From positions 14,570,001 through 14,634,000 of the forward strand of contig OY740817.1 in NCBI GenBank assembly GCA_963514005.1: DNA of 64,000 nucleotides, read 5' to 3'. The DNA is from Raja brachyura. Its lineage: Eukaryota. Shown in pieces: positions 12,187-55,159 of this stretch; positions within the stretch are counted from its first letter, which is position 1, and each line of letters begins with the position of its first letter. The notes below the pieces were generated by a model, which made no database searches, had not been told where the DNA came from, and worked only from the letters and a program-made list of their open reading frames with translations. The translations under genes were made by a program, and so were the position numbers.

Positions 12187-12203
12187 TGTTACCCAGCCCT
12201 CAA

Positions 12204-34361: not shown

Positions 34362-34488
34362 CATTTAGTCGGGGGCTTGTGGAAATGTCGCAGTAAGAGG
34401 TAGAGCAGCAGCAACAGTGTGATAGCAGCAATGGAGGTCGGCACAATCCACCGGTGATCTGTGGCTCTCACCGTTTCCTTCGGATTCT
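34362..34488 (-). CDS. B7-family gene, stalk/transmembrane exon
   Basis: Acceptor TCTTTCCCGCAAG|, donor |GTGAGT, 127 nt, phase 1 in and phase 2 out. NPKETVRATDHRWIVPTSIAAITLLLLLYLLLRHFHKPPTK: hydrophobic helix followed by basic residues. Confidence 0.8.
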
Positions 34489-36052
34489 CTTGCGGGAAAG
34501 ACACCGACACAGAAACATCCGCTCAATATTGATGCAATTATTAAAAATCAGAAACCAAAATAACTTTTGTGCAATTTTCCACAGAATCCTTGGAGGTATG
34601 AGGAATACAATGTAGTTTAGAGGTTTAGAGATACAGTGTGGAAACAGGCCCTTGGGCCCACCGAGTCTGCACCGACCAGCGATCCCCACACATTAGCACT
34701 ATCCCACACTAGGGACAATTTACATTTATACCAAGCCAATTAACCTGTACGTCTTTGGAGTGTGGGAGGAAACTGGAAATCTCGGAAAAAGCCCACGTGC
34801 GGTCACGGGGCGAACGTACAAACGCCGTACAGACAGGACCCGTATATAACTTGTATTTAAGGTCAAACTGGGCAGTGGGAATGACCAGTGGATGATAAAT
34901 TTATGCAGGGCCCCACGTACAAGACACTGCGCAGCATCTGGTGAAGGCCAGTGTACCTGGAAAGTTCTCATATAGAACATAGAACAGTACAGAAAATAGA
35001 CACAACGTGCTGGAGTAACTCAGCGGGACAGGCAGCATCTCTGGAGAGAAGGAATGGGTGCCATTTCAGATCTATGCCTTTCTTCAGATCCGGTCTGGAA
35101 AAGGGTCTCGACCTGAAACTTCACCCATTCCTTCTCTCCAGAGATGCTGCCTGTCCCGCTGAGTTATTCCAGTGTTTTGCGTCTGTCTTCGGTGTAAACC
35201 AGCATCTGCAGTTCCTTCCTACACAGAACAGTACAGCACAGGAATAGGCCCTTCGGCCCATAATGTCTGTGACAAACACGATGCCAGGTTATACTAATCC
35301 CCTTAGTTTTAGTTTACTTTAGAGATACAGCGCGGAAACAGGCCCTGTGGCCCAACACGTCCGCGCCGACCGGCGATCCCCGCACACTAACACACTAGGG
35401 ACAATTTCCAATTTTATTTCGGAGTCACGCGAGTGACTACGTGAAGAAGCCCCGCCAGGTGCATGTTCGGCATTACGTCGACGCATGTGGCACCGACAGG
35501 GTGGAGAGCGCAGCTCCCACCAGCGGTAAGTTTAACCCATAGGTAAGTCAGTGTTGAACTTCTTGCCAGTGTTTTTTAAACTCTGTAAGTCTGCAGAGCC
35601 AGCTAGAGTGTTTATGTATTGTGGAATTTTAAAAAAACTCTACATCTGGCTTGAATATACGGAGCAAGCTGGAGTATAAGTATTTAAACTGCAGTAATTG
35701 AATGGAACGCGCTGAAACCGCAGTTTCCGATTTAGATGGGATCGGGAGATAAGGCTGATTTAAAAACCGGTTCCCGCTATTTAGATCGGGTTTGGAGATA
35801 ACGGCTGCGCTAAATGCCGGCTCCAAATACCCACAATGGTAAAATAAAGTCTGCTCTGTGTAAATGTTACCAGATGCAGTTTTCCTTTATGGAAATGTAT
35901 ACTGAGGTTAATACTAATATTCTGACAAGCAGAATGTGCCTCTCAGAATTATAATTTTAAAGGTATATGATTTATGCACAAATACAAAACAGTAAAGAAA
36001 GTAACTCTCCTCCAAGGGAAGACAAGAATGAGGGGAAGGCTGGAAATGGAGA

Positions 36053-36522
36053 AAATGCTCCACACTTGACTTAGTCAAGGGTTCTAAGACCCATGTATGT
36101 CTTCCTGTAAGGCAAGCTCCAAAGGAGTTTCCATACGCTGAGTATGGTGCCTATGAAAATGGAATTCTGATTCTCCAGTATCTTGGTTAGGTCTGGATGA
36201 GGTCACTAGAGCAAGATAAAATGCTCAGAATTCTAATCAGTCAAAGGTTTTAAAGACCCACTAAGGCAGGCTCCATACACCAAGTATGGTGCCTATAAAG
36301 AATGAGAATCTCATTCACCAGTGCCTTGCATAGGTCTGGATGAAGTCTTTAGAGCAAGATAAACTGCTCAAAACTCTAAACAATTAAGGGTTTTAAGACC
36401 CATGAGATTCTAAGGCAGGCTCCGAAGGAGTTTCCATACAATGAGTATGGTGCCTATGAAGAATGAGAATCTCATTCACCAGTGCCTTGCATAGGTCTGG
36501 ATGAAGTCTCCTTAGAGCAAGA
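36053..36522 (+). repeat. Three ~140-165 bp tandem units within DIRS-B gag
   Basis: Recurring AGACCCA..AAGGCAGGCTCC..AGTATGGTGCCTAT..AGGTCTGGATGA..TAGAGCAAGA. Single copy in DIRS-C at ~47750-47910. Confidence 0.8.
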
Positions 36523-37183
36523 CTCAGGAGTACCAGGGCAGGATGAAACTGATCCTGAAGCTGGTGTCCCTACTTATGTGTATACACCAGAGCACAATAG
36601 AAATGCTCCGGGTGTTCCCGATGTAGCACCAAGTTTTGCTATATCGGTATGGACTGGTGAGGCTATGGATGAACCTGGCGGCCAACATTATTTGGTTTCT
36701 CACCTACTCCAAGATACTGTTATGACTGAAACAGTAAATAATATATAAAACACCCGTCTATTGTGCCTCGCTCAGGGTGCCATCAGTAACTCAGTAATTA
36801 GGCACCCATGAGTCAATGATGCGAGGACAGGAAATGTGTTCCAGTATGTCCTCTAGCTGATATTCAGTTGGCATCATTGTATTTGGAGAAGACATACATG
36901 GGTCAATAATGTCCAATACTGTTAAGACATGCTTGCGTTACTCTGCAATGCATATTCGAACCCAATTGTATGATGCAAATTGCCATTTGGCTAACATTAT
37001 CCCCAATATACGCAGGATTATATGGGACAAGCTATAACCAGATTTATGATTGATGAAAACGAACCCCTATATTAAGAAGGAGGAGATCTTCTGGTTCATT
37101 TACGGAAGTACAGAAACGTCATTCCATTACACATGGAATTTCTGGGAAAACAACCTATGGTTGGTTAAGATTGCAATTGTTTA

Positions 37184-38131
37184 TTTGGGAAGAAAGCTTA
37201 CAACAAATTCATCGCTGTTCGTTAAATGCCAGACATACTTTGATACAATTCAAAGTAATACATAGATTACACTACTCAAAAAAGAAATTAAATAGAATTT
37301 TTCCTAATATATCACCATTATGTGATAAATGTCAGCACATAGAAGCCGATTTAACTCATAGTTTTGTAATATGTACAAAACTTAATAACTATTGGACTGA
37401 GATTTTTAAAATTATTTCCATAGTTTTAAAGATCACATTAAGCCCTGCTCAAAATTAATTATATTTGGGGTTTTAGATTCAAACCAAACTTTAAAAGTAA
37501 ATCAAAGAAATTTTCTGGATTACTGTTTAATTATTGGAAAAAAATTAATATTACAATTTTGGAAGGGACCATTATCCCCGACAATTAAAATGTGGACAGT
37601 GGAAATGTTGGAGACATTACAACTGGAGAGAATTAGGTTTATCCTAATGGATAAACTTGAGCTTTTTGAACAAATATGGTCTCCATTCACTGATTATATG
37701 AAGGGGTAGCTGGGCTCGGCATTGAAACTCAATGAGTACCCGGTGGAAAGATCAAACAAAAATGTTTAATTTCAGATTTATATACTTGTCTCTATATATT
37801 ATATTTAGAAATTGCTCCATTCATTGATAAGATGTATACTGTTTTCTTTTCCACACGTATAATAACAGTTTACTAGTTATATGTTTTTTTTTTGTTTGTT
37901 GTTTTTTTTTATATTAATCAAATATAATCATACTCTTTTAATTACCCACTATTCTTTCTTTATACTTTTTTCTTATTCTCTTTTTTCACTCTATAAAAAA
38001 AAGTGAGGCCTATATATATGGTTTGCTAATATTTATATAATTTTGGAAAGATGTATTAACTATATCTGAAAAAAATTGTTATATTATTTGTAATATGTAT
38101 GGCCTCTAATAAAAATATATTTTTTAAAAAA
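37184..38131 (+). mobile_element. L1 3' fragment inserted in DIRS-B
   Basis: HRCSLNARHTLIQFKVIHRLHYSK..CDKC..LTH matches the L1 at 31450-31980. A-rich tail. Probable TSD ATT(G/A)CAATTGTTT. Confidence 0.85.
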
Positions 38132-39538
38132 ATTACAATTGTTTTGTAATTCTGCATTAATCTGATCGGCTTGGTGTTTGAATGTACCAGAAACTCGTCA
38201 GGTAGAGATAATATATACCAGACACAAGTATGGGGGTTGCAGAGTCATTCTAGGACTCACAAACTTAACTTTATAGTTCAGTATGAACATTTTTAAAAAG
38301 TACACTTCAGCATTATAATGAAGTTGTTATCACAAGGCTGCTATGTGGTTATTTTTTAGATTTTAAAAAGATGCCTATTATTCAGGTACTTCAATTAATT
38401 GGATGGGTCAGCTGAAGGAATTACCTAATGGGTTAAATTCAGCCCTCAAATTGCTCACACAATTATTGAAACCAGCACCGGTGTTAATGAGGGCTCAGAA
38501 TCACATTGTAATGACTTATCTAGAGGATATGTTAATTGTAAATGGGAGACAGCTGAAGAACTGAGTTCAGCAATCATAAGCTCATTGAAAGGCTAGGTTC
38601 TGTACATCCAAACAACATGGAAGTTACAGGCATCCCAAGCAACTGATTATTTGGGGTTTGTTTTTAATACAGTTGATATGTGAGTAACTTTATCAACAAA
38701 TTAAGGTTGGGGATGTTACAAATGCCTGTATTTGTCTTGGGGAAAAAACATTATCCCACCATCCAAGAAGTAGCTACGGTTACTGGTAAAATGATAGCAG
38801 CATTCATGCTGCCGAATTGGGACCTCTGCATGATCAAAGTCTGCAAAGACCAGAGTATAAGAGTAAAAAGCGTGCAGGTTATTGATTAGATCCATGCAGT
38901 TACCAAATAAAGGTTGAGTTGAATTCAATGATGGATTCGCAATGTTGCACAAGTTACTAGAAGTAAAAATTTGCTTGTTCAGAAGTCTTCAGTGTTATTA
39001 CAGACTGATGAGAGTGTTCTCAGATGGGGAGCTTAGGACAGCGACACCAGTTGTGGTGGTCGATGGACTGTCCAAGACGATTAATTCTCCAAATACATGG
39101 TTGAATTATTTGGAGTTATTGGGGGCATTTTATGCATTGATAGCTGTTGTTCTACAATAAAGAACTTGCATGTTCAATTACGAGTAGACAATACCACAAC
39201 TGTGGGAGAATACAATATTGTGATAAGACAACAGATCATGAAAATGCAAATTACAATACAGAATGAATGTTAAAATTCAAAAAGTTTTAAAAAGATTGTA
39301 TAGTATGTGTACGGTACACAGTATGTGTACCAAATGTTGATCTGTTGTGTCTGGATTAAATCCCCAGTGGTCTAAATGTGTCTCGTGGGAGTCAGACCTA
39401 GGATCATTAGCAGTGGATGCATTCTCGCTACATTGGGGAAGTATAGTCTTTTATGTTTTCCCCATTTTGTCTGATTAGACAATGTATCGCCAAAATAGAG
39501 CAAGTCTCCGCCGCAGGCGTTTGGTGTTCCAAATTGGT

Positions 39539-39625
39539 ATTGTTCTCGGCCTTTTGGCTAAGATCAAGTGTAGTATCTGTTCTTATCAGTTAATATCTGA
39601 TACGTCCCTTATCTAGGGACCATTA
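39539..39625 (+). pseudogene. RNU2: 3'-truncated U2 snRNA copy
   Basis: TTCTCGGCCTTTTGGCTAAGATCAAGTGTAGTATCTGTTCTTATCAGTTAATATCTGATACGTCCC..GGGACCAT is the U2 5' ~90 nt, including the branch-pairing GTAGTA. No Sm site and no snRNA promoter. Confidence 0.93.
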
Positions 39626-39944
39626 CTACACAGCCATTGTTCCCATTGGTGCTCAGAATAATGATTCAGACATTCATGACAAATACCAGGTGCAGTAATT
39701 GTTGGTACATCCAGTAACGGCAGAAGTCATCCATTACATGACCGTATTCTTACAGTTTACAACTTCCCCTTGTGTAGGAAGGAACTGCAGATGCTGGTTT
39801 ACACAGAAGACAGACACAAAATGCTGGAGTAACTCAGCGGGACAGGCAGCATCTCTGGAGGGAAGGAATGGGTGAGACCTTTCTCCAGACACCACCGCTG
39901 TTATTACAAAGAAAAGCTTAAAAACAAAGATCATGAATCTTTAC

Positions 39945-40283
39945 CTGTTACTTGTAGTGTGACTGCAACTCGTAGAACCACGCTGTAGCCCCCAGTGGGG
40001 TGTTTCAACTGAATGAAGCACGTGTACGTGGCTGCGTCGCTCACTCGGAGGTCGGTGAGAAGAAGGGAGAAGTTGCCGTGTTTGAACTCTGCGGTGAACA
40101 GCCTTGCCCTGGTGCCCAGGCCCGATGTGTGGTCCTCTCTGCCCACATGGAAGGAATGGATTAACCGCTTGTCCACCTGCCAGTAAACGCGAATATCATT
40201 GTTGGCTTGTTTCCCCACGTTGGTGTCCAGACAGGGCAGGAGGGCACTTTCACCCACAAAACCCGTGAGGTTAGACGGCGACA
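39945..40283 (-). CDS. B7-family gene, second IgV exon (recent duplicate)
   Basis: 339 nt, phase 1-1, intact CCCCAG| and |GTAAAG. LLPC..DIRVYWQ..RARLF..GNFSLLL..SDAATYTC. Confidence 0.85.
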
Positions 40284-40949
40284 CTGGGGATAAAATAAGG
40301 ACAAAATAAGCCAGGGTCTCGTCCACTCATTCATTCTCCCCACAGATGCTGCCTGTCCCGCTGAGTTACTCCAGCATTTTATGACTATCTTCGGCTGAAA
40401 CCAGCATCTGTAGTTCCTTCCTACACATTTTTTTTAGTTTAGAGATACAGCGCGGAAACAGGCCCTTTGGCCCACTGAGTTCACGCCAACCAGTGATCCC
40501 CGCACACTAACACACTAGGGACAATTTACAATTATACCAAGCCTACAAACCTGTACGTCTTTGGAGTGTGGGAGGAAACTGGGGATCCTGGAGAAAACCA
40601 ACACAGGTCACAGAGAGAACGTGCAAACTCCGTACAGACAGCACCCGTAGTCAGGATTGTCCCCGGGTCTCTGGCTCTGTGAGGCAGCGACTCTACCGCT
40701 GCGCTACCGTGCCACCCCGGTGTTTCCCAACTGCGCTGAATGCCATTTTAAATTCTCAATGGCCCTTTCACTACTTCCAATTGTTCTACTACCCTCGATT
40801 GCCCAAAATAGGTGCGAGGGGCAAAGTTTAAAGAAGAAGTGAGAGGGCAGTTTTTTTACAGAGTGTGGTGGGTGCCTGGAATGCAGTGCCAGGGGTGGTG
40901 GTGGAGGCTGATATGATAGTGGTGTTGAAGAGGCTTTTAGTTAGGCACA

Positions 40950-43215
40950 CGGACCATAATATGGTTGAGTTCTTCATTAGGATAGAGAGTGACATTGTTA
41001 ATTCAGAAACAATGGTTCTGAACTTAAAGAAAGGTAACTTTGAGGGTATGAGAAGTGAATTGGCCAAGATTGACTGGCAATCAATTCTAAAAAGGTTGAC
41101 GGTGGATACGCAATGGAAGACATTTAAAGACTGCATGGATGAACTACAAAAATTGTTCATCCCAGTTTGGCAAAAGAATAAATCAGGGAAGGTAGTGCAT
41201 CCGTGGATAACAAGGGAAATCAGGGATAGTATCAAAGCAAAGGATGATGCGTACAAAGTAGCCAGAAAAAGCAGCATACCAGAGGACTGGGAGAAATTCA
41301 GAGACCAGCAGAGGAGGACAAAGGGCTTGATTAGGAAAGGAAAAATAGATTATGAAAGAAAACTGGCAGGGAACATAAAAACTGACTGCAAAAGTTTTTA
41401 TAGATATGTGAAGAGAAAGAGATTAGTTAAAACAAATGTAGGTCCCTTGCAGACAGAAACATGTGAGTTGATCATGGGGAACAAGGATATAACTACTTTG
41501 GTTCCGTCTTCACTAAGGAAGACATAAATAATCTGCCGGAAATAGCAGGGGACCACGGGTCAAAGGAGGAATTGAGTGAAATCCAGGTTAGTCGGAAAGT
41601 GGTGTTGGGTAAATTGAATGGATTAAAGGCCGATAAATCCCCAGGGCCAGATAGGCTGCATCCCAGAGTACTTAAGGAAGTAGCTCCGGAAATAGTGGAT
41701 GCATTAGTGATAATCTTTCAAAACTCTTTAGATTCTCGAGTAGTTCCTGAGGATTGGCGGGTAGCAAACGTAACCCCTCTTTTTAAGAAGGGAAGGAGAG
41801 AGAAAACGGGGAATTACAGACCAGTTAGTCTAACATCGGTAGTGGGGAAACTGCTAGAGTCAGTTATTAAAGATGGGATAGCAGCACATTTGGAAAGTGG
41901 TGAAATCATTGGACAAAGTCAGCATGGATTTACGAAAGGTAAATCATGTCTGACGAATCTTGTGGAATTTTTCGAGGATGTAACTAGTAGCGTGGATGGG
42001 GGAGAACCAGTGAATGTGGTGTATCTGGACTTCCAGAAGGCTTTCGACAAGGTCCCACATAAGTGATTGGTATACAAACTTAAAGCATACGGCATTGGGG
42101 GTTCAGTATTGATGTGGATAGAGAACTGGCTGGCAGACAGGAAGCAAAGAGTAGGAGTAAATGGGTCCTTTTCACAATGGCAGGCAGTGACTAGTAGGGT
42201 ACCGCAAGGCTCAGTGCTGGGACCCCAGCTATTTACAATATACATTAATGATCTGGATGATGGAATTGAAGGCAATATCTCCAAGTTTGCGGATGACATT
42301 AAGCTGGGGGGCAGTGTTAGCTGTGAGGAGGATGCTAGGAGAGTGCAAGGTGACTTGGATAGGCTGGGTGAGTGGGCAAATGTTTGGCAGATGCAGTATA
42401 ATGTGGATAAATGTGAGGTTATCCACTTTGGTGGCAAAAATAGGAAAATAGACTATTATATAAATGGTGGCCGATTAGGAAAAGGGGAGATGCAGCGCGA
42501 CCTGGGTGTCATGGTACACCAGTCATTGAAAGTAGGCATGCAGGTGCATCAGGCAGTGAAGAAAGCTAATGGTATGTTAGCTTTCATAGCAAAAGGATTT
42601 GAGTATAGGAGCAGGGAGGTTCTACTTCAGTTGTATAGGGTCTTGGTGAGACCACACCTGGAGTATTGCGTACAGTTCTGGTCTCCAAATCTGAGGAAGG
42701 ACATTATTGCCATAGAGGGAGTGCAGAGAAGGTTCACCAGACTGATTCCTGGGATGTCAGGACTGTCTTATGAAGAAAGACTGGATAGACTCGGTTTATA
42801 CTCTCTAGAATTTAGGAGATTGAGAGGGGATCTTATAGAAACTTACAAAATTCTAAAGGGGTTGGACAGGCTAGATGCAGGAAGATTGTTCCCGATGTTG
42901 TGGAGGTCCAGGACAAGGGGTCACAGCTTAAGGATAAGGGGGAAATCCTTTAGGACCGAGATGAGAAGGACTTTTTTCACACAGAGAGTGGTGGGTCTCT
43001 GGAACTCTCTGCCACAGAGGGTAGTTGAGGCCAGTTCATTGGCTATATTTAAGAGGGAGTTAGATGTGGCCCTTGTGGCTAAGGGGATCAGAGGGTATGG
43101 AGAGAAGGCAGGTACGGGATACTGAGTTGGATGATCAGCCATGATCATATTGAATGGTGGTGCAGGCTTGAAGGGCCGAATGGCCTACTCCTGCACCTAA
43201 TTTCTATGACTATGA
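40950..43215 (+). mobile_element. CR1 LINE, 5'-truncated ORF2 with frameshift and stop
   Basis: DHNMVEF, KSPGPD, NYRPVSLTS, QHGF, DFQKAFDKVPH, PQGSVLGP, FADD, RPHLEYCVQFW and a CR1 tail. Confidence 0.95.
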
Positions 43216-43879
43216 CTCTATATGCAGGGAACGGAGGAATATTGATCATGAGAAGGCAGGGGAGATCAGTTTTACTTTGCATCATGCTTGGGACACACAT
43301 TGTGGGCCGAAGGGCCTGTTCTGTGCTGGATTCTCATAAGTTCATAAGTGATTGGAGCAGAATTAGGCCATTCGGCCCATCAAGTCTACTCCACCACTCA
43401 ATCATGGCTGATCTATCTCTCCCTCCTAAACCCATTCTCCTGCCTTCTCCCCATAACCCCCAACATCTTCTACAACTTTGCCACCAGCTACAGCCGGTGA
43501 TGGCATAGTTATGGGGCGTGAAATAGGAGCTCAACAAATCAAAGAATGAAGACAGAACGGAATCGTCATCTCAGTGAAAGACAATACAAGTTTCTTTTAT
43601 TCTATGGATCCCAGAAATGACAAACAGAAAATACTTATCAGGTCAGGCAGCATCTATGGGAAGAGAAGTATTCAACGTTGTAGGTTGAAGAGCCAAGAGA
43701 CATTTAGTTTAGTTTATTGTCACGTGTACCGAGGTACATTGGAAAGCTGTTTTTGTTGCGTGATATCCAGCCAGCGGAAAGACTATACATGATTACAATC
43801 GAAGAAAGCTCTCAATCCGAAACGTCACCTATCAATATTCTCCAGAGATGCTTATTCTCCAGAGATCCCTATTCTCCAG

Positions 43880-45125
43880 AGATACATCGACGACTGATTT
43901 GGTGTCACCTCCTGCACCCATACTCAACTGACTGACTTCATCCGTTTCACCACCAACTTCCATCCGGCACTCAAATACACCTGCACCATTTCCGACACTT
44001 CCCTACGATTCCTTGACCTCACCATCTCCATCGCAGGGGATACACTCCTGACCGACATCCACTATAAATCCACTGACTCCCATGGCTACCTGGACTACTC
44101 TTCCTCCCACCCTGCTTCCTGTAAGGACTCCATCCCCTATTCCCAATTCCTCCGTCTACGCCGCATCTTGCTCCCAGGATGAGGTGTTCCACACCAGGGC
44201 ATCACAAGTGTCCTCGTTCTTCAGAGAACATCCCCTCCCTCACTATAATTGAGGCTCACACCAGGGTCTCCTCCATACCCTGCAACACTGCCCTCTCTCC
44301 CCATCCCCCCACTCGCAACAAGGGCAGAGTCCCCTTGGTCCTCACCTTTCACCCCACCAGCCGGTACATACAACACATAGTCCTCCGCCAGTTTCGCCAC
44401 CTCCAACATGACCCCTCCACTCGCCACATCTTCCCATCTCCCCCCATCTGCCTTCCGCAAAGACCGCTCCCTCCGCAACTCCCTTGTCAATTCTTCCCTT
44501 CACTCCCACTCCACCCCTTCCCCGGGCACTTTCCCTTGCAACCGCAAGAGATGCTACACTTGTCCCTTTACCTCCCCCCTCCACTCCTTTCAGGGACCCA
44601 AGCAGTCCTTCCAGGTCCGACAGAGGTTCACCTGCACCTCCTCCAACCTCATCTACTGCATCCGTTGCTCTAGATGCCAGCTGATCTACATCGGTGAGAC
44701 CAAGCGGAGGCTTGGCGATCGTTTCGCCGAACACCTCCGCTGGGTCCGCAATAACCAACCCGACCTCCCGGTGGCTCAGCACTTCAACTCCCGCTCCAAT
44801 TCCGTATCCAACCTCTCTGTCCTGGGCCTCCTCCACGGCCAGAGTGAGCAACACCGCAGGTTGGAGGAACAGCACCTCATATTCCGCTTGGGGAGTCTGC
44901 ATCCTCTTGGCATGAACATCAAATTCTCTCAATTCTGTTAACCCTGGCTGTCTCCTCCCCCTCCTACCTCTCCCTCAGCCCTCTCCTCCTCCTTTTTCCT
45001 TTCTTCCCCCTGCCTCCCCCCACCCCCTATCAGTCTGAAGAAGGGTTTCGGCCCGAAACGTTACCTATCTCCTTCGCTACTTAGATGCTGCAGCACCCGC
45101 TGAGTTACTCCAGCATTTTGTGTAC
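43880..45125 (+). mobile_element. Penelope-like element 3' half (RT C-terminus, GIY-YIG endonuclease, tail with hammerhead motif)
   Basis: RYIDD, FLDL, PCNRKRCYTC, NLIYCIRCSRCQLIYIGETKRRLGDRFAEH. Confidence 0.92.
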
Positions 45126-45355
45126 CCTCCAGAGATGCTGCCTGACCTGCTGAGTTACTCCAGCAATTTGTATCTATCTTCAGTGTAAACCAGCATCTGC
45201 AGTTCCTTCCCACACATGATTACAATGTACAGATACAGGATAAAGGAAATAACCTTTAGTGCAAGATAAAGTCCAGTAAAGTCAACTTGAAATGTTACGG
45301 TTGTTGTCTATATTGAGGGAGTTTTTCCAAGGAGAGATTTTTTTTCCCCACTTAC

Positions 45356-45652
45356 TTGCAGTAAAGGTTTCAGTTTGCTCCTCCTTCAGCCTGGTGTTGT
45401 AAATGCTACAGGTGATGCAGTGTACTCCAGCGGACACCCACAGGACCGAGGTTACGTTGCACAGTCTCTCCGGGGAGCAGTCGGTGTGGGTTGTGGCCGT
45501 GCTGTTCGGATCCAGGTTCAGGGACCCGCAGGTCCAGCCCACCGCTGGGGCTGGATACCCTCCCCAGGAGGAGCAGGTCAGCCTCAGCACCCCTCCTGCA
45601 CCTTGCTGCCCCTCCGACAGATCCGTACTCAGGGTTGGCTTGGCAAAGTGAG
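45356..45652 (-). CDS. B7-family gene, IgC exon
   Basis: 297 nt, phase 1-1, CATTCCAG| and |GTAAGT. AHFAKPTL..LRLTCSSWGGYPAPAVGW..LCNVTSVL..ITCSIYNTRLKEEQT resembles the ICOSL/CD80/CD86 C domain (C..GYP.P...W). Confidence 0.9.
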
Positions 45653-45732
45653 CTGGAATGGAACAGCAGCGTTAACATGAACAAGACAGCGCTGACTGGC
45701 TGGCACCCAACAAACGCCTTTCACTGTTCCTC

Positions 45733-46130
45733 GATAGACTTTTATTTTAAATTTCAAAATATACTTTCTTCGAGAAATAAATATATCCAACACATGATCC
45801 TTACATCCAACATTCTCGGATGCTATACATACATTCAATACTGTTTACACAAATCACACAATTTTACCCCACACCCTTGCCACTCATGTGGCCCACTTGC
45901 ATGGAATCCCTTCCCTTATTTAGAGGGGCGTCTCCACCATACCGTGCCCCCATGTCCCGCAGTGGAAGGGCCCTAGACTGTGGCCCTCCCCCACCGAGCC
46001 TTGGCGTTGGCTGCACCGAGCTTCAGTGTGTCCCTCAGCACGTACTCCTGCAGTCTGCAGCGGGCCAGTCGGCAACATTCCCCGACGGACATCTCGCTCT
46101 GCTGGGGGGTCAACAAAGCTCGGGCCAGAC
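45733..46130 (-). mobile_element. Tx1-clade LINE 3' fragment
   Basis: Homologous to 6960-7370. Confidence 0.8.
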
Positions 46131-46369
46131 ACGTGCCCAGGGTAGGCAGTCAGTCGGCAAACTGTTCTCCTTTCCGTAAAATTAAAATAAAGAAAGTAAC
46201 AATTCAATTTCCCCAAGGCTTCCAAACCTCCATCCTTCTGAATTAGTGAATGGGTGGGGGGTGGAGGGTGGCGGCAGGTGGAGAGATGGTGGGAAAAACA
46301 GGAGCACTCCGGGACAAGTTGAATCAGTTGTGATCTTATTGAATGACAATACTTGTTCAAGGGGCCAAT

Positions 46370-46930
46370 TGGGGGGGAGAGTTCCTTTCACAGCGTGTGG
46401 GGAGTCTGGCCAGGGGAAAGTAACGGGGAGGGCAGGAGCGTTGAGAAGGAGGGGGTCGGGGATCATGCCAGTATCCCACTCAATCATCGCTACCGCGGCG
46501 CTCTGGGCACGGAGCTACCGCATTGTGCCGGGGAGGTAAGCAGCTCATGTCGCTGCGAGCGGCCGCCGGGACCTCAACGCCTTCTGCCGGCCCACTCACC
46601 TCTGGCAGTGCTCTCCATCTGAACAGGGAGGGGACCAGCTCAAGAGCAAAGATCATAGAGCGGAGCGGGTCAGCGGGTGATGGATAACAGGACTGCAGAG
46701 CTCACGCCTGTGTCAGAGCGAACAAGGGACCAATTGAGGTTACTCACACAGACATACGGAGTAAGCTCCACCGCCCGCTGTCCTGTTATCCATCGCCCGC
46801 TGGCCCGCTCTTGAGCTGGTTGCTGCAATGATCCCCGACCCCCTCCTTCTCAACGCTCCTGCCCTCCCCGCATCTTTTTCCCTGGCCAGACACCCCACAC
46901 GCTGTGGGAGGAACTCTTCCCCCCCCCCCA
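46370..46930. repeat. GC-rich element with nested inverted repeats, class unknown
   Basis: 46425-46466 versus 46828-46870, and 46657-46703 versus 46764-46811, are reverse complements. Confidence 0.6.
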
Positions 46931-47252
46931 ACCCCCAACCCCAGCGGCACTGTCCTTTTACAGCCGCTTGGTCTGCGCATGCGCAGTACGCAGTTGACGG
47001 TCCAAAGCCAGATTTTCAGCCGCCTTCAGCTCGCCTTGAAATTGACGGCTTGAAGCAGCGTCCACGGCACGTGGGCTGCACACACTTTCCCGTCTTACAT
47101 GTACTGCGCATGAAAGGCACGGAGAATTATGCCTACCTAAGAGATCGATCTCTTAATTTTCCCAATTCTGCCATTCGCTTGCCCAATTCCCCAGTTGAAC
47201 TTGACCCTGGTGCATCTATAAACTACCTTCCTCACTGTCCACCACACCTCGA

Positions 47253-50200
47253 ATTTTACTTCTGAGTCACGTGAGTGACTACGTGAAGAAGCCCCGCCTG
47301 GCGCTTGATCGGCATTACGTCGATGCTGTCGGTAGGGAAAGAGCTGCAGAGCGCAGCTCCACCAGCGGTAAGGAAACGGCCCACAGGTAAATAAATTATT
47401 TTTACTTCCAGGGCATTTCAAACTCCGTGAGGCTGGTGGGAAAAGACCAGGAGGAGTTTAAAAATAAAAATGGAGAAAGCTCCTAAAAAATCGCGGGTAA
47501 AACGTGCATCCCGGGGTGGAGAAGAAAAATAGTCGGGACAGCAGATTATTACGGAAACGGTTCCGATACCGGTGGCCGTTGAAATACCTGTTAGTGAGCC
47601 TTTGGTTGCTCCACAAGCAGAAGCCACCGAGGCAAATCCAGTGCCTAAAAAAATGTTAAAGAAAATCTGAGAGGCCCGTGGTTTCTGATGACTCTGATAC
47701 TGAAAATCCTCCAGATAGAAAAGCCTTATGGCTTAGAATGGATCAAATGGAAAATGATCCAGACAAAAATCAACCAAGGGTCTAAAAAACCCAGAATATT
47801 CCCAGGCAGCCCCTCAGGGGGTTCCATATCATGAATATGGTGCCAGTTTGAATTGAGAATTTGAAACTCCAGACTCTGGGATTGGGCTGGAGAAAGTCCT
47901 TGAGCAAAGTCTCAGGAGTACCAGGGCTGCATGAGACTGATCCTGAAGGTGGTGATTTCGGTCATGAGTAGCCACCACAATACAAAAATATTGCTCCAGG
48001 TGTGTCTGATGTGGCACAAAGTTTCTATACCTGGAGGAGGCTGCGAGGCCATGTAAGAAAACCTGGCGGCCAACATAAATTATTTGGTCTCTCACCAGCT
48101 TCAAGAAGCTGTTATGGTTGATACAGCAGAATTATTATACCTCAATGAAGGTACCCACGGTAAATTCGGCTATTTGGCGCCAATGTCATCAATTATGCGA
48201 ACGCAGGAAATATGATTTCGGCTGGGACCACTACTTTTGGAAGGCAAGTGGAAGATTGTGGAATGACCAAAGTTCAGAAGGATATGTTGGCATTGTTCTG
48301 CAACTCAATATTTGAGATTAATTGTATGAGGAAGATTGCCATTCGGCCTATTTTACATCCAAGATTTGCAGGTTTGTGCAGATCAAGCAATGTTCAAGCT
48401 CCTGGTTATTTGTTTGGAATAAAATCTGTTTAAATAAAGAAAGAGATTGATAAAGAGGCAAAGACTATTGACTTCATGAAACCCTTCGTTTTGGCCAAAG
48501 AAGGGCCGGTCAAACGAGAAGGGGATTTTGAGTTGGAGCTGGAACAAGCCGAGGCAGGAGTATGGTAAGGAAATATTACCAACCATCACAGCTGAATGTT
48601 ACCCATATGTTGGGAGAAGGAGACCACCACGTCCGGTTGGAGAGGTACAAAAGCTTTATCCTATTACAGAAGAATCTTTGGATGAACCTCAGATTGGTAG
48701 TAGTCGACAAATGTTTTATGATAAATGGGACTGTATAACATCTGACCGTGTTATATTAGGTACTGTCTTAGGATCTACCATTGATTTTGTAGAAGGTATT
48801 GATCCACAAGGACAGAATAAGCCTAATAGTTTTTGGTGTAAAAAAGGAGTTATCGAGAAATCAAGTGAGGATCCACAACAATTTGTATCAAATATTTTCC
48901 CCAGAGCAAAGAAAGATGGGGGTTGTACAATCATTTTAGACCTCACACTTTTTAATACATTTGTCCAGTATAAACATTTTAAAATGGATACCTTCAACAC
49001 TGCAGTGCAGCTGGTATCAACAGATTGTGACATGGATACAATAGATTTGAAGGATGCATATTATTCAGTACCAATTCATCGTCACTTTCGCAGGTATTGA
49101 AATTTAATTGGATGGGACAGCTGTGGTAATACAAAGTATTACCTAATGGGTTAAGCTCAGCTCCTAGGTTGTTCACTAATTGTTGAAACCAGCACTTGCA
49201 CTGCTCAGGGCACAAAAACACATTGTTATGGCTTATCTAGATGACATTTTAATTGTCAATGCTAATCAGGAGACAGCTGAAAAATCAGTCTCGGCGACTA
49301 CAAGTCTGTTTGTAAGGCTAGGTTTCCTGATTCATCCAACAAAATCTAAAGTTACAGCCATCCCAAACTATTGAATATTTGGGGTTTGTGATTAATTCAG
49401 TTACCATGTTAGTAACTTTACCAATAGACAAGATTGCTGATATTACAAATGTATGTCGGTGCCTTATTGACAAACCTTATCCCTCCATCCGAGAAGTTGC
49501 TAATGTTATTGGTAAATTAGTAGCAGCATTCCCTGCAGTAGAATTTGGTCCACTGCATTACCAAAATCTCAAAAGGGCAAAAACACAAGCGCTTATACAG
49601 CGAGCAGGCCATTTTGATAGGCCCATGCAATTGCCAAAGGAAGCTTTATTAGAATTGTATTGGTGGATTGAGAATGTTCCACAAGCTATTAAAAACATTT
49701 TGGTTCAGCAGCCAGCAGTGATTTTGCAAGCTGATGCAAGTTCTCTCGGATGGGGTGCTACGGATAATGATACCAGCTGTGGGGGCAGATGGATTGTCCA
49801 AGAGGATTTATTTCTCCAAACATATGGTATAAATTATTTGGAGTTACTGGGAGCATTTTATGGATTAAAAGCTTATTGTTCTACTATGAAGGATTTGCAT
49901 GTCCAATTACAAGTAGACAATACCACAGCTGTGGCATATATCAATCACATGGGTGGAGTAAGATCATTATCATGTGATCATCTGGTTAACCAGGTGTGGC
50001 ATTGGTGTATTGGTAAGAATATTCAGTTTTCAGTTATTTATCTCCCAGGGAGAGACAATATTGTGGCAGATAAAAGATCACGAAAATTTAAAGACAGTAC
50101 AGAATAGATGTTAAATCCAAAAATTTTCAAAAATGTTGTTGGTACCGGACATATCAGTTGGAGTACCGGACATTGATCTGTTTGCATCTAGATTAAATCA

Positions 50201-52146
50201 CCAATTGCCCAAATACGTGTCTTGGGAACACGATCCAGGGGCAGTAGCGGTGGATGCTTTCTCGCTACACTGGTGGAATACGTTCTTTTATGCCTTTCCC
50301 CCATTCTGTCTGTTTGGGCAATGTCTCAAGAAAATAGCGCAAGAGCTGCCAAGGGCATTTTGGTGGGGCCAAATTGGCCTACACAGTCATGGTTCCCATT
50401 GAGGCTTAAAATGATTATTGAACCATGTATGACGATTCCTAGTTGCAACGATTGTTGATACAACCAGTAACAAAATAAATTCATCCATTGCATGATCATA
50501 TGAATTTGTTAATCTGCAGCTTCTGACCAGACCGTTGCAAGAGCTTGGACTGTCGGATAGGACCATGGATGTTATAGCTGCAGCTTGGAGAAATAGCACT
50601 AAAAAAAACAATATATGTCGCATATAAAGAAATGTGAAGTCTTCTGTAGGCAGTCAAAGATATCTTATCATACTGCGAACATATCAAATGTATTGGAGTT
50701 CCTTGCTGGGTTGCATTTTGATGAGCACTTAAGTTATAGTGCCATTAATAGTGCGCGTAGTGCTTTGTCGTCCTATTTAGGACAATTGGGTCTCACCCAT
50801 TAATATCCCGGTTCATGAAAGGAATTTTAATAAAAATCCTCCCAAGCCCAGAGATACAGAAATTTGGGATGTTAGCATTGTTCTCACTTTGCTTAGGCAA
50901 TGGACTCCAATTACTTCAATGTCTTTGCAAAGGTTAACATTCAAGGTAGTAATGTAATGGCATTAGTGTCAGCTCAAAGAGTACAAACTTTGCAATTGTT
51001 ACGGTTAGATTGCATGCATGTGGCTTCAGATAACATTGTGTTTTATGTTTATCATCTGATCAAACAAAGCAGACAAGGAAAAACTGGAGCCAAGGTAATG
51101 TTTAAAGCATATCCTATCGATGAAACATTGTGGGTAGTTAAGCATTTAACTAAATATATTGAAGTTAACTTATCATTGTACCGCTGCTGACAGATTCATT
51201 TCACTTGCACTTTGTGTGCAATGTGACGAATAAAACTGATTGATTGATTGAAGTAACCAAAATCTCCGAGGTGCTGAGACAGCGTTACTGATAACGCACA
51301 AAAAACCACATACAAAAGTTGCAGTTCAAACCATTTCTAGATGGTTAGAACAGGTTTTGGATTTAGCAGGAGTGGACACTGATGAGTTTAAGTTTCACTC
51401 CACTAGGGCTGCAGCTGCGTCCGCGGCGAAGGTACAGGACGTACCACTCGATCAAATTTTAGAGGCCGCAAGGTGGTGTAAAGAAGAAACTTTTTCAAAG
51501 TTCTACGATAAACCTATTGTCACGGTGCCAGGATTTGGACACACAGTGTTGGGTTCGCTTTAAATGCTTGCTTTGTTTTATATTATCGATTTATGTTATC
51601 ATTTGATATCATTATCACTTGTTGTAAAATTTTTCCCCTGGGATAGAGGGGTTATTATTTTAAAAATTGTTATTTTTATGATTAAAAGACTTATTACATA
51701 AATTGAAACAATGTTTTAAAAAATATTATTTACTCACTACTGTATTGACTACACAGAGTGTCGTATGGAATGAATCTACGACATAAAAAACACAGAGCTT
51801 TAAAATCTTCATGTAGTCACTCACGTGACTCCGAAGTAAAATAGTAAGATTAAACGAGAACTTACCTGTTCGAAGTTTGATCTTTATTTTATGAGGAGTT
51901 ACGATGAGGGATGACGTGCCCTCCGCTCCCAACCCTCATAATATAAATGATCATCTGGTAGTTCTAGCCTATGTTGAGCCTTACTATCTTACTCCGGCTA
52001 TTGGTTCTGTGTTTTTCATGCCGCTGCTTTGAAGTATGCCGATCCAGCGCCAGGCGGGGCTTCTTCACGTAATCCCTCATCGTAACTCCTCATAAAATAA
52101 AGATCAAACTTCGAACAGGTAAGTTCTCGTTTAATCTTACTATTTT
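47253..52146 (+). mobile_element. DIRS-like retrotransposon C, structurally complete, ORFs disrupted
   Basis: Left ITR from 47253. Gag, RT (IDLKDAYY, YLDD), RH, MT, YR (HSTR..W..FY). ICR at ~51807-51912 is complementary to both termini. Right ITR plus extension ~52037-52146. Both ends read ATTTT. Confidence 0.95.
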
Positions 52147-53272
52147 GGTGCCATCTACACACTTGATAATCTATATTCTCTTCCACACTGCAAACAAAGA
52201 CCAACCAGTCCAAATCGGTGCCATTTTTTAATTGGTGAAGAGGGAAAATTGCTCATCACATGTTTTTTTTTGTCTCTTGAGCGTCAGAGATGGATTGGGG
52301 GTGGTAAATAAAATTCCAAGAGCTTTAGTGTTGACGGTCAAACCCTTTATCCCCAGGGTGGAAATGTCAAAGACTAGATGGCGTAGCTTTCAGGTGAGAG
52401 GGGCAAAGTTTAAAGGAGATGTGCGGGGCAAGTTGTGTCACACAGAGGGTGGTGGGTGCCTGGAACGCGCTGCCAGGGGTGGTGGTGGAGGCAGATATAC
52501 GATAGTGGTGTTTGACATGGTAGTGCAGGGATTAGAGCGATGTGGCAGATGAGATTAGTTTAGCCGGGTATCAAGTTTGCTGGGCCGAAAGGTCCATTCC
52601 TGTGCTGTACTGTTCTATGTTCCACCTATCAGCTACTGCTGGGTCCCAAAGAATATCTGCAGACGATGACGATCTTGAGTGCACGGAGCAACGATCAGGG
52701 AAACGAGTCGGTCTCAACAATTACGAGTAATATAGAAGGAACAAGTCCATTGGGCAGCATGGTGGCGCAGCGGTAGAGTTGCTGCCTCACAGCGCCAGAG
52801 ACCCAGGTTCGATCCTGACTACGGTCGCTGTCTGTAGGGAGTTTGTACTTTCTCCCCGTGACCTGCGTGGGTTTTCTCTGGAAGCTCCGGTTTCCTCCCA
52901 CATTCCAAAGTTGTACAGGTTTGTAGGTTAATGAGCTTGGTATAAATGTGAAATTCTCCCTAGTGTTATTGTGCGGGGATTGCTGGTCGGCACGGACTAG
53001 GTGGGCCAAAGGGCCTGTACCAAGCTGTATCACTAAACCAAACTGAACTAAATTTCCTAAGTATGCTTCCATTTTACAACTTCCCCTTGTCACCACCATT
53101 GTGTAGGAAGGAACTGCAGGTGCTGGTTTACACAGAAGACAGACAAAAATGCTGGAGTAACTCAGCGGGACAGGCAGCATCTCTGGAGGGAAGGAATGGG
53201 TGAGACCTTTCCCCGGACACCACCGCTGTTATTACAAAGAAAAGCTTAAAAACAAAGATCATGAATCTTTAC

Positions 53273-53611
53273 CTGCTACTTGTAGTGCGACTGCAACTCG
53301 TAGAACCACGCTGGGGCCCCCAGTGGGGTGTTTCAACAGAATGAAGCATGTGTACATGGCTGCGTCGCTCACTCGGAGGTCGGTGAGAAGAAGGGAGAAG
53401 TTGCCGTGTTTGAACTCTGCGGTGAACAGCCTTGCCCTGGTGCCCAGGCCCGAAGTGTGGTCCTCTCTGCCCACATGGAAGGAATGGATTAACCTCTTGT
53501 CCACCTGCCAGTAAACGCGAATATCATTGTTGGCTTGTTTCCCCACGTTGGTGTCCAGACAGGGCAGGAGGGCACTTTCACCCACAATCCCCGTGAGGTT
53601 AGACGGCGACA
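53273..53611 (-). CDS. B7-family (ICOSL/CD80/CD86-like) gene, first IgV exon
   Basis: 339 nt, phase 1-1, canonical splice sites. V-set C..W..D.A.Y.C with the B7-type RVYWQ and GNFSLLL. Confidence 0.9.
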
Positions 53612-54914
53612 CTGGGGATAAAATAAGGACAAAATAAGCCAGGGTCTCGTCCACTCATTCATTCTCCCCACAGATGCTGCCTGCCCACACTCACACTATC
53701 CTACATACACTAGGGACAATCTACAATTGTTACCGAAGCCAATTAACCTGCTAACATGTACGTCTTTGGAGTGTGGGAGGAAACCGGAGCACCCAGAGAA
53801 AACCCACACGGGTCATGAGGGGATCATACAAACTCCATACAAACAGCACCCATAGTCAGGCTTGAACACAGGTCTCTGGCACTGGGAGGCAGCAACTCTA
53901 CTGTGGCGCCACCCTCTTTTTCTGAAGAAAAAGTATAACATACAATATTTCTAAGGATCGCAACTATTGTGTTATGGCAGCACTGCAGCTCAAAGTCATC
54001 CCTCTTCATCTCCCAGGGTTATTGCTGGTCCGTCTCCCTAGGGTCGAGAACCTTCTGGCCACTGGCAATCCCTGTGGACTGGGATCTGAAACTATAACTT
54101 TATCACTCACATGGAGGAAGGCTGAAATAACAGAGGCTTGGATGGAGTCCTCTCCGGACGTACTTCCCACAGGCTGGGGTTGCCCCACCACTGGTGTATG
54201 TGTGGGACAGGCTGTCGACAGACAGATGAAGCATAACTGTCTTTTCTCAGACACAACAGAGGTGATCCGTGCATCTTTTAGAGTTACAGAGGGTGGTGCA
54301 GCGGTAGAGTTGCTGCCTCACAGCGCCAGAGACCCGGGTTTGGACCGGACTATGGGTGCTGCCTGTGCAGAGTTTGCACGTTCTCCCCGTGACCACGTGG
54401 ATTTTCTCCGGGTGCTCCGGTCTCCTCCCACACTCCAAAGACATTCAGGTTTGTAGGTTAATTGGCTTCTATAAAGTATAAATTGTCCCTAGTATGTAGG
54501 TTGGTGCTAGTATGCGGGGTGATCACTGGTCTGTGTGGACTCGGTGGGCCAAAACATACACTGTATCTCTAAACCAAGCATGAAATCAAGCCCCTTGGCC
54601 CACCGAGCCCACACCGTCCATCGATCGCCTGTTCACATTAGTTCTGTGTTGTCCCACTTTCTCATCCACTCCGTACACACTCGGGGTAATTTTACAGAGG
54701 GCGGCCAATTAACCTACAAACCCGCACATCTTTGGGATGTGGGAGGAAACCGGAGCACCCGGAGAAAATCCACATGGTTACAGGGAGAACGTGCAAACTC
54801 CACACTGGCAACACCGGAGGTCAGGTTCTAACCCGGGTCTCTGGCGCTGTGAGGCAGTGGCTTTAGTTCATGAAACTAATGGACCTATTCAGAGAAGTGG
54901 AAATTAATTCTTAC

Positions 54915-54976
54915 CTGTTCTGCAACACAAAAGCAGCCAAGCACATTGGAGCAGCGCAGCCACCCGTCTTGTCACC
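54915..54976 (-). CDS. B7-family gene, signal-peptide exon
   Basis: TGTTGCAG| ... |GTAAGA, 62 nt, phase 2 in and phase 1 out. VTRRVAALLQCAWLLLCCRT. Same split-leader layout as ICOSLG and CD86. Confidence 0.75.
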
Positions 54977-55159
54977 CTGCAACACAGTGAATGCATTGAT
55001 ATTTCAAAGGTGAATCCATTTACAAGTTACTGACAATAGCCACACGCAAATTGGAGGAATAGCATCTCATATTTCGCTTGGGCAGCTTACAACCAGTGGT
55101 ATGAATATTGATTTCTCTAATTTCAAGTTACCCTTGCATCCCCTCTCTCTCTTTCTCTC

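What the first reader, a model, noticed from the sequence alone, without database searches (positions are those of the whole stretch)
34362..54976. B7-family costimulatory gene with a newly built V-C-V-TM architecture
Seen: exon order SP, IgV, IgC, IgV', TM. All Ig exons are phase 1-1 with intact splice sites and no stops. The two V exons differ at about 11 of 339 nt by my count. Known: ICOSL, CD80 and CD86 are V-C-TM; HHLA2 is V-C-V; 4Ig B7-H3 arose by V-C duplication. Inference: a recent, lineage-specific exon duplication gives a convergent V-C-V B7 molecule, or optional V-C, V-C-V and V'-only isoforms, in a cartilaginous fish.
Basis: partly seen in the sequence, partly recalled or inferred. 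Interest (0 to 1): 0.75.

Follow-up and report, generated by a model that had tools for sequence, protein, structure and literature searches.

The report
Skate B7 gene with duplicated IgV exon
A skate immune-ligand gene of the B7 family carries a second, near-identical copy of its outer immunoglobulin exon between its second domain and its membrane anchor, a layout that public gene models of the little skate also show but whose use in mRNA is still unproven.

Summary
All Ig exons are phase 1-1 with AG/GT sites. V and V' differ at 11 of 339 bases.

The gene is a B7 family member. Its nearest named kin are tetrapod ICOS ligand and CD276, and orthology is unresolved.

The duplicon is about 615 bp and edged by SINE pieces. 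No second C exon exists in the window. Contigs from an independent run hold both versions, so an assembly artefact is unlikely.

'Newly built' is only partly right. RefSeq models of the little skate ('CD276 antigen-like') already read V-C-V-TM, with exactly the junction residues predicted here. Ten other elasmobranch species show only V-C, and the horn shark shows V-V-C. V and V' pair by species, which means either gene conversion or repeated duplication.

No RNA evidence for or against V' inclusion could be obtained. V' alone sits inside a 104-nt inverted SINE repeat predicted to form a long pre-mRNA stem.

An unchecked note from this scan reports a second V-C-V gene 42 kb beyond the window.

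The parts
54915..54996 (-). Leader (signal peptide) exon. ATG at 54996-54994, 82 nt, ends in phase 1, donor ACAG|gtaaga.
   Evidence: Read. tblastn of little-skate P0153 residues 1-27 covers 54996-54916 at 92.6% identity, E 1.6e-9.
53273..53611 (-). IgV exon (V), 339 nt, phase 1-1.
   Evidence: Sequence. Pfam V-set E 2.1e-10, 41.2 bits against a cut-off of 26. Best PDB match CD276.
45356..45652 (-). IgC exon (C), 297 nt, phase 1-1. It is the only C exon in the window.
   Evidence: Sequence. Pfam C2-set_3 E 5.5e-8 (33.2 bits, cut-off 27) and C2-set_2 27.4 bits (cut-off 21). 93% identical to little-skate C. tblastn and a profile search find no second C.
39945..40283 (-). Duplicated IgV' exon, 339 nt, phase 1-1, no stop, with the same splice sites as V.
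   Evidence: Sequence. 11 of 339 nt differ from V. Pfam V-set E 7.3e-11.
34362..34488 (-). Stalk and transmembrane exon, 127 nt, enters in phase 1. A run of five C at 34371-34375 puts its end one base out of the frame used by Leucoraja and Rhinoraja.
   Evidence: Sequence. tblastn of Rhinoraja P0159 covers 34516-34376 at 61% over 51 aa, E 1e-10, and stops at HK just before the C run.
32863..32915 (-). Last coding exon (cytoplasmic tail and stop), acceptor tttcag|AG. It reads EATHRTSRTSVDSAVNL-stop in the frame of the relatives. In the window's own frame the junction TG|A is itself a stop.
   Evidence: tblastn of P0152 covers 32922-32866 at 84% over 19 aa, E 4e-4. P0159 gives 74%, E 0.005. Sequence.
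39744..40358 (-). Duplicon, V' copy: 75 nt of intron, the exon, and about 200 nt of intron.
   Evidence: Local alignment and blastn against 53061-53686: 614 aligned nt, 18 differences, 95% with gaps counted.
53061..53686 (-). Duplicon, V copy.
40324..40427 (.). Upstream arm of the 104-nt inverted SINE-like repeat around V'. The V copy keeps only 35 nt of it (53652-53686).
   Evidence: 104 nt, 88% complementary, 449 nt between the arms. Its words have a depth of millions in all four runs.
39771..39874 (.). Downstream arm of the inverted repeat around V'.
   Evidence: RNA fold of 40450-39750 gives -299.9 kcal/mol, z -10.9. The V region gives -231.7, z -0.5.
41572..43122 (+). Reverse-transcriptase ORFs of a LINE-like element inside the C-V' intron. 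They are antisense to the gene and not part of it.
   Evidence: Pfam RVT_1 E 1.7e-11 and 5.1e-14.

Best explanation
This is a real six-exon gene for a type I membrane ligand of the B7 family in a skate. Its nearest named relatives are tetrapod ICOS ligand and CD276.

A roughly 615-bp piece holding the whole IgV exon with its splice sites was copied into the intron between the IgC and membrane exons. The copy is bounded by SINE sequence on both sides. Because the exon is phase 1-1, both inclusion (leader-V-C-V'-TM, about 415 aa) and skipping (leader-V-C-TM, about 300 aa) keep the frame.

I think V' works as a cassette exon that is included in some transcripts. I also think the V-C-V' layout arose before the split of this skate and the little skate and is kept alike within each species by gene conversion.

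Shown: the anatomy, the family, the reality of the DNA, and the same layout in little-skate models.
Inferred: splicing of V', the single origin with conversion, and any effect of the RNA stem.

My odds for the parts:
- real duplication: 0.95
- B7 family: 0.95
- V' in at least some mRNA: 0.6
- single origin plus conversion: 0.55
For: Anatomy.

Family: Pfam. A profile of 11 elasmobranch orthologues against PDB gives CD276 112.6 bits, ICOSL 107, CD80 78.7 and PD-L1 69.5. In one search, 19 tetrapod rows are named ICOS ligand or ICOSL, at E 1e-31 to 2e-50.

Reality of the copy: in run X1 (organism A) a contig on 39930-40058 carries exactly the 7 V-type letters. Places specific to V' are covered at a depth like the single-copy C exon (26.1 against 22.6), and shared places are deeper (57-84) (the tool warns that contig depth is a poor measure). 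The copy is only about 615 bp long with different flanks, unlike a misplaced haplotype.

Same layout elsewhere: Leucoraja erinacea models P0001 and P0153 are V-C-V-TM and P0151 is V-C-V. Their junction residues are the ones the window's phases predict: C|V' A+TG = M, V'|TM G+AG = E, and C|TM A+AG = K in P0152.

V' is not decaying faster than V. Organism B's single contig agrees with V' at about 7 and with V at 4 of the 11 differing places (7 of its 8 differences are listed). dN/dS is 0.58.

An unchecked note reports a second V-C-V gene nearby.
Against: No transcript evidence:
- 0 of 20 holder runs are on record as RNA.
- None of the 15 joints listed is 45356>40283, and 12,854 further joints were not shown.
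- The one run guessed to be RNA (X20, another species) has a contig running from the C exon 100 nt into the downstream intron.

Gnomon models may lean on protein homology, so the little-skate models are not proof of splicing. One little-skate locus is modelled V-C-TM only (P0152, P0158).

Ten other elasmobranch species, among them the skate Rhinoraja longicauda, have V-C models only.

Organism D looks single-copy for V by contig depth, and organism B is ambiguous. Both observations fit a younger, repeated duplication better than an old one.

The SINE upstream of V' is no more like the one upstream of V (77.8%) than like 18 other copies in the window (72.9-87.5%). There is therefore no trace of an older, wider duplication there.

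The window's membrane exon is out of the relatives' frame near its end.
Confidence: 0.5

Rival explanations
1. Recent, independent duplication. The V exon was copied in this species' own lineage. The little-skate V-C-V and the horn-shark V-V-C are separate events in a gene whose SINE-flanked V exon is prone to duplication.
For: V and V' pair by species with support 99/97, and little-skate V1 and V2 likewise with 95/88. Horn-shark models have a different order, V-V-C, with identical copies, so the exon has been duplicated more than once. V-V' divergence (11/339 in the exon, 7/275 in the intron) is about that between organisms A and B (8 differences in a 420-nt contig). Organism D appears single-copy by contig depth. 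Flanking SINEs show no excess likeness.
Against: It needs the same exon to land in the same intron twice within skates. A second V-C-V gene is reported in the same genome (unchecked), and two little-skate contigs carry the layout. That is easier to explain if the layout preceded gene duplication. Contig depth is explicitly unreliable.
Confidence: 0.35
2. Silent pseudo-exon. V' is real DNA but is skipped in essentially all mRNAs. It looks intact only because it is young or is refreshed by conversion from V. The functional protein is V-C-TM.
For: dN/dS of 0.58 from 7 non-synonymous and 4 synonymous changes is compatible with weak or no constraint. V' alone is enclosed by a 104-nt, 88% complementary inverted repeat with a predicted fold of z -10.9. 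That could loop the exon out; this effect is inferred from general knowledge of flanking inverted repeats. One little-skate locus is modelled only as V-C-TM, with two isoforms that differ by a 15-nt acceptor choice (P0152, P0158). No RNA junction into V' was seen.
Against: Splice sites are identical to those of the constitutive V exon. Three little-skate models include V'. V' has fewer derived changes than V, about 4 against 7 with organism B as yardstick.
Confidence: 0.3
3. Assembly artefact. V' is an allelic copy of V put into the wrong place.
For: The copies are 97% alike. At 40021 all three X1 contigs read the V-type letter, not the window's.
Against: The copy is about 615 bp with unrelated flanks on both sides, and its upstream edge lies inside a complete SINE that is truncated at V. 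Contigs of X1 cover V'-specific letters at single-copy depth and also hold the V version. The same layout is in an independent assembly of another skate.
Confidence: 0.03

Closest known systems
RefSeq models 'CD276 antigen-like' of Leucoraja erinacea (XP_055522047.1, XP_055487388.1, XP_055522048.1)
   Same: Same gene family and the same leader-V-C-V-TM order. The junction residues are the ones predicted from the window (M at C|V', E at V'|TM). The read-through ending GKDS-stop after V' is the same. Identity to the window is 80-84% in V and 93% in C.
   Different: It is another species. Its two V domains are identical, or differ at 2 residues, where the window's differ at 6. These are automatic models named by likeness. 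I found no paper that describes the layout.
4Ig B7-H3 (CD276) of mammals
   Same: A B7 gene enlarged by in-frame duplication of Ig exons, with long and short forms made by alternative splicing (PMC3172298, abstract and section 5 read). CD276 is the best solved match of both V and C.
   Different: In mammals the V-C pair was duplicated in tandem, giving V-C-V-C. Here only V was copied and no C' exists. The skate gene is not shown to be the CD276 orthologue.
ICOS ligand of tetrapods
   Same: The closest named family outside elasmobranchs. In one search, 19 rows at E 1e-31 to 2e-50 cover 66-92% of the query. Human ICOSL scores 107 bits against the profile. Three elasmobranch orthologues are named 'ICOS ligand-like' by NCBI.
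   Different: 8 of the 9 rows named ICOS ligand that one search examined are V-C-TM. Identity is about 30%. Orthology was not tested by synteny or by a tree with true CD276.
HHLA2 (B7-H7)
   Same: V-C-V order of ectodomains. This is recalled, not tested here.
   Different: The third domain here is a 95% copy of the gene's own first domain. HHLA2 is not among the 60 best of 168 PDB matches.
'CD276 antigen-like' of Heterodontus francisci (XP_067875579-86)
   Same: The orthologous gene, also with a duplicated and identical V domain. Isoforms with and without the extra V are modelled.
   Different: The order is V-V-C, so it is a separate event.

Membership tests
B7 family (IgV-IgC type I membrane ligands) | N-terminal IgV domain with the two canonical cysteines and tryptophan | tested here: met
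   Pfam V-set 41.2 and 42.7 bits (cut-off 26) for V and V'. LLPC...VYWQ...YTC is present in both.
B7 family (IgV-IgC type I membrane ligands) | Membrane-proximal CD80/butyrophilin-type IgC (C2-set) domain | tested here: met
   C2-set_3 33.2 bits (cut-off 27) and C2-set_2 27.4 bits (cut-off 21).
B7 family (IgV-IgC type I membrane ligands) | One Ig domain per exon, phase 1-1, with the leader exon ending in phase 1 | tested here: met
   Read. Exon lengths are 339, 297 and 339 nt.
B7 family (IgV-IgC type I membrane ligands) | Single transmembrane helix and short cytoplasmic tail | tested here: met
   A hydrophobic stretch in exon 34488-34362. It is homologous to the Rhinoraja membrane region, E 1e-10. 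No transmembrane predictor was run. The tail is cut short by the frame change.
B7 family (IgV-IgC type I membrane ligands) | Binds a CD28-family or related receptor | not testable with these tools
   Needs binding assays.
ICOS ligand (orthologue) | Groups with tetrapod ICOSL to the exclusion of CD276 and other B7s, with conserved synteny | tested here: inconclusive
   ICOSL rows dominate the profile search, but human CD276 scores slightly higher than human ICOSL in PDB (112.6 against 107 bits). No true CD276 sequence was at hand for a tree. The window holds no neighbouring gene that would inform synteny.
CD276 (B7-H3) orthologue | Groups with vertebrate CD276 | tested here: inconclusive
   It is the best PDB match, and NCBI names 10 of 13 elasmobranch rows 'CD276 antigen-like'. 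Only 3 non-elasmobranch rows carry a CD276 name, against 19 for ICOSL.
4Ig B7-H3-type duplication | Tandem duplication of the V-C exon pair | tested here: not met
   The window holds one C exon only. tblastn and a profile search of all six-frame segments find no second C.

The most novel reading that the evidence does not exclude
Skates of the family Rajidae have turned an ICOSL/CD276-like ligand into a switchable one- or two-headed molecule. A copy of the receptor-binding IgV exon sits as a cassette next to the membrane. It is kept nearly identical to the first V by gene conversion across species. Its inclusion is governed by a 104-nt SINE-derived inverted repeat that encloses the exon in a double-stranded RNA stem, with skipping or circular RNA as the alternative outcome. 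This would be convergent with 4Ig B7-H3 and HHLA2. The excess of changes in the F-G strand region (7 of 18 differences in 81 nt, P 0.006) would mark the start of divergence in binding between the two heads.
Probability: 0.2. Interest if true: 0.6.

Novelty: new variant of a known kind. Interest (0 to 1): 0.38.

Why it matters
B7 ligands set the second signal for lymphocytes, and how their ectodomains gain domains is known mainly from mammalian 4Ig B7-H3. A V-only duplication in cartilaginous fish would be a second, independent route to a multi-headed B7 ligand. It appears in two skates, and in another order in a horn shark. It also offers a natural case for studying SINE-mediated exon duplication, concerted evolution of exons within one gene, and control of a cassette exon by flanking inverted repeats. 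The value is limited for now: the layout is already in automatic gene models, the receptor is unknown, and no transcript has been seen.

Tried and rejected
Approaches that led nowhere or were limited:

1. Reads. The run search on the C exon found 20 holders, none on record as RNA. The single read-laying run (39700-45699; runs X1, X3, X10, X20; likeness 90) was swamped by SINE and LINE copies. 12,854 joints and 13,962 loose ends were not shown, so it cannot speak to the C>V' junction.

2. Depth. Copy-number readings for organisms B and D rest on contig depth, which the tool itself warns against. I give them as weak evidence only.

3. Older, wider duplication. Collinear blocks 35407-39504 against 47249-50343 (72-85% identical) look like two copies of one transposable-element family. 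The SINE upstream of each V shows no excess likeness. The question stays undecided.

4. A C' remnant, a further V exon, or a leader exon upstream of V'. None was found.

5. Short relatives. A word search with the 131-aa V' ORF, looking for proteins predicted from transcript contigs, scored nothing among 12 candidates.

6. Little-skate DNA.

7. Tree against true CD276. No such sequence was held. The 'CD276 antigen homolog' of Hemiscyllium (P0115) turned out to be a V-V protein.

8. Literature. Searches found no paper on a skate or shark V-C-V B7 gene. PMC3709836 (Flajnik 2012) is not held. I saw it and Hansen 2009 only as reference entries in PMC11599192. PMC9127221, PMC12907318 and PMC3964593 were seen only as search listings. 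Supplements were not asked for.

9. Joined model. Every exon was handled on its own, and junction codons were worked out by hand.

Full report
**What is there.** On the minus strand the window holds six coding exons.

- Leader: ATG at 54996, ending at 54915 in phase 1.
- IgV: 53611-53273.
- IgC: 45652-45356.
- Second IgV (V'): 40283-39945.
- Stalk and transmembrane exon: 34488-34362.

All Ig exons begin after AG and end before GT, are phase 1-1 and have no stop. V and V' differ at 11 of 339 bases. These are 4 synonymous and 7 non-synonymous changes giving 6 amino-acid differences, with dN/dS 0.58.

**The duplicon.** The likeness covers 614 aligned bases (40358-39744 against 53686-53061) with 18 differences and two small indels. 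Both copies end in SINE-like sequence whose words reach depths of millions in all four runs laid. Upstream of V' the SINE is complete and follows the A-tail of another SINE. Upstream of V it is cut down to 35 nt. As a result V' lies between two 104-nt arms that are 88% complementary and 449 nt apart, while V has only 35-nt arms.

- Folded as RNA, the V' region gives -299.9 kcal/mol (z -10.9 against 20 shuffles). The stem closes over both splice sites.
- The matching V region gives -231.7 kcal/mol (z -0.5).
- Seven of the 18 differences fall in 81 nt that encode the F-G strand region (binomial P 0.006).
- No second C exon, further V exon or extra leader is in the window by tblastn or by a profile search of all six-frame segments of at least 20 aa.
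- The introns are full of retroelements.

**Is it real DNA?** The run search found 20 holders in six coded organisms. I laid X1 (organism A, which holds all the words and is possibly the source sample), X3 (organism B), X10 (organism D) and X20 (organism D, guessed to be RNA) on 39700-45699. All are Logan contigs, and the tool warns that their depth is a poor measure.

- X1 has a contig on 39930-40058 with exactly the 7 V-type letters expected there.
- X1 covers V'-specific places at 26.1, against 22.6 for the C exon and 22 for a unique intron piece. Shared places stand at 57-84.
- Against a simple picture, all three X1 contigs at 40021 read the V-type letter, so that difference is not fixed or X1 is another individual.
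- A 615-bp copy with unrelated flanks is also not what a misplaced haplotype looks like.

I put an assembly artefact at about 3%.

**Other species in the reads.**

- Organism B has one 420-nt contig (39936-40355) with 8 differences from V', of which 7 are listed. At the 11 diagnostic places it reads the V letter at 4 (40261, 40260, 40021, 39987) and apparently the V' letter at the rest. At codon 99 it has a third state, from which both window codons are one step away.
- B's contig ends exactly at the first base shared by V and V'. Its depth (214) is twice that of B's C-exon contig (102) but close to that of a unique intron contig (189). Copy number in B therefore stays open.
- Organism D's V contig (64, plus 35 for a second contig at one place) matches its C exon (58, plus 36). 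That looks like a single copy.

**RNA.** No run is on record as RNA. X20 covers the C exon and part of a V exon but not the unique intron places 43489-43619 and 40787-40810. Two of its contigs stop 3-4 nt past the C acceptor, whereas the DNA contig of the same species runs on. This is what spliced V>C reads would produce. Its 396-nt contig, however, runs from the C exon 100 nt into the downstream intron without a break. None of the 15 joints listed is 45356>40283, and 12,854 were not shown. Inclusion of V' is therefore neither shown nor refuted.

**What gene it is.** Pfam gives V-set for both V exons and C2-set_3 and C2-set_2 for C, all above their cut-offs. CD276 is the best solved match for V and for C. 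A profile of 11 elasmobranch orthologues scores as follows.

| Solved structure | Bits |
|---|---|
| CD276 | 112.6 |
| ICOS ligand | 107 |
| CD80 | 78.7 |
| PD-L1 | 69.5 |
| CD86 | 63.6 |
| BTN1A1 | 62.6 |

Against the large protein collection, the same profile finds 19 tetrapod rows named ICOS ligand or ICOSL (E 1e-31 to 2e-50) and 3 non-elasmobranch rows with a CD276 name. Only the 8,000 candidates sharing most words were scored. NCBI elasmobranch rows 'CD276 antigen-like' and 3 'ICOS ligand-like'. I file the gene as a B7 family member of the ICOSL/CD276 kind, with orthology unresolved.

**Relatives and their layouts.** The search of 1.84 billion representatives with the V' exon gave 866 hits at E 0.001 or better. 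The best two each carry two V stretches.

- P0001 (414 aa, 88% identical) is XP_055522047.1, 'CD276 antigen-like isoform X1' of Leucoraja erinacea.
- P0002 (435 aa, 58% identical) is the same name in Heterodontus francisci.

Profiles of V and C run over 39 fetched proteins gave these layouts.

| Species | Layouts found |
|---|---|
| Little skate | V-C-V in 3 of 5 models, V-C in 2 |
| Horn shark | V-V-C in 4 of 5 isoforms, V-C in 1 |
| Rhinoraja, Pristis, Mobula birostris, Hypanus, Heptranchias, Mustelus, Cetorhinus, Rhincodon, Hemiscyllium, Scyliorhinus torazame | V-C in one model each |

The little-skate sequences show exactly the junction residues that the window's phases predict...TFTA-M-SPS......LQIA-E-NTK... 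and, in the V-C form...TFTA-K-NTK.... One isoform ends GKDS-stop, which is the read-through of the V' donor; the window has the same reading. These are automatic models and may lean on protein homology, so they do not prove splicing.

**Age.** In a tree of 23 V domains, the window's V and V' pair with support 99/97 and the little skate's V domains group with 95/88. Within skates, V is 80-84% identical between the window and the little skate, while C is 93% identical. Two readings fit.

- One insertion of V' before the two skates split, followed by gene conversion within each lineage.
- Separate duplications.

For the second: the horn shark's different order shows that this exon does get duplicated, D seems to be single-copy, Rhinoraja is modelled V-C, and the flanking SINEs show no excess likeness. 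I lean 55:35 to the first.

**How it most likely works.** The product is a type I membrane ligand. Because V' is phase 1-1 and has the same splice sites as V, the cell can make V-C-V'-TM or V-C-TM. Read-through after V' or after C would give soluble forms. The long stem around V' is the one clear difference from V. By analogy with other exons flanked by inverted repeats (general knowledge, not tested here), it should favour skipping or back-splicing, so I expect mixed use. V' has fewer derived changes than V, so it is not visibly decaying.

**Compared with what is known.** Mammalian 4Ig B7-H3 arose by tandem duplication of the V-C pair and is alternatively spliced with the 2Ig form (PMC3172298, abstract and section 5). 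Here only V was copied. HHLA2 has V-C-V order (recalled), but its third domain is not a recent copy of the first. Searches found no paper on this layout in cartilaginous fish. PMC11599192 (passages read) treats the CD28 receptors of these fish, not this ligand.

**Verdict.** The finding is real and correctly described. Its interpretation is partly right. The layout is not unique to this genome and is already in RefSeq models. Use of V' in mRNA remains the open question.

Noticed in passing
window 34371-34375 (minus strand, end of the membrane exon): A run of five C puts the last 12 nt of the exon one base out of the frame used by Leucoraja and Rhinoraja. With the last exon at 32915, the junction TG|A becomes a stop and the tail is 9 aa instead of 26. 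It may be a real frameshift or a homopolymer error.
   Followed up: partly
window 45255-45655, run X20 (organism D): A 396-nt contig of a run guessed to be RNA covers the C exon and 100 nt of the downstream intron, yet stops 3 nt past the acceptor. This may be read-through giving a soluble V-C form, unspliced RNA, or DNA.
   Followed up: partly
proteins P0002, P0155-P0157 (Heterodontus francisci): The horn-shark orthologue is modelled V-V-C-TM with two identical V domains, plus a V-C isoform. This is a separate V exon duplication in the same gene.
   Followed up: partly
window 35407-39504 and 47249-50343: Collinear blocks 72-85% identical, in the same orientation, each downstream of a V exon. 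They are either two copies of one transposable-element family or the trace of an older, wider duplication.
   Followed up: partly
window 39948-40028: Seven of the 18 V/V' differences, six of them non-synonymous, fall in 81 nt encoding the F-G strand region (P 0.006). By comparison with organism B, most are derived in the first V.
   Followed up: partly
window about 6000-18000: tblastn chance hits recur at an offset of 7,866 bases (7744/15610, 8194/16060, 8589/16455), so this stretch holds a tandem repeat of about 7.9 kb. Each copy carries an N run (6462-6674, 14149-14329). The N runs were left alone.
   Followed up: no
window 44408-44938 (+): An ORF with a weak GIY-YIG match (E 3.8e-4, 21.1 bits, below the 22.6 cut-off) sits in the C-V' intron, perhaps from a Penelope-like element. 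The LINE reverse-transcriptase ORFs at 41572-43122 lie in the same intron.
   Followed up: no
window 40021, run X1: All three contigs of organism A read the V-type letter at this V' place, and extra variants appear at 40017 and 40146. The V exons are therefore polymorphic, or a paralogue's exons were laid here too.
   Followed up: no
protein P0184 (Pterocles gutturalis, 'ICOS ligand-like', 505 aa): A bird model also scores V-C-V with these profiles, with the third V at 381-470. It could be a fused neighbouring gene.
   Followed up: no
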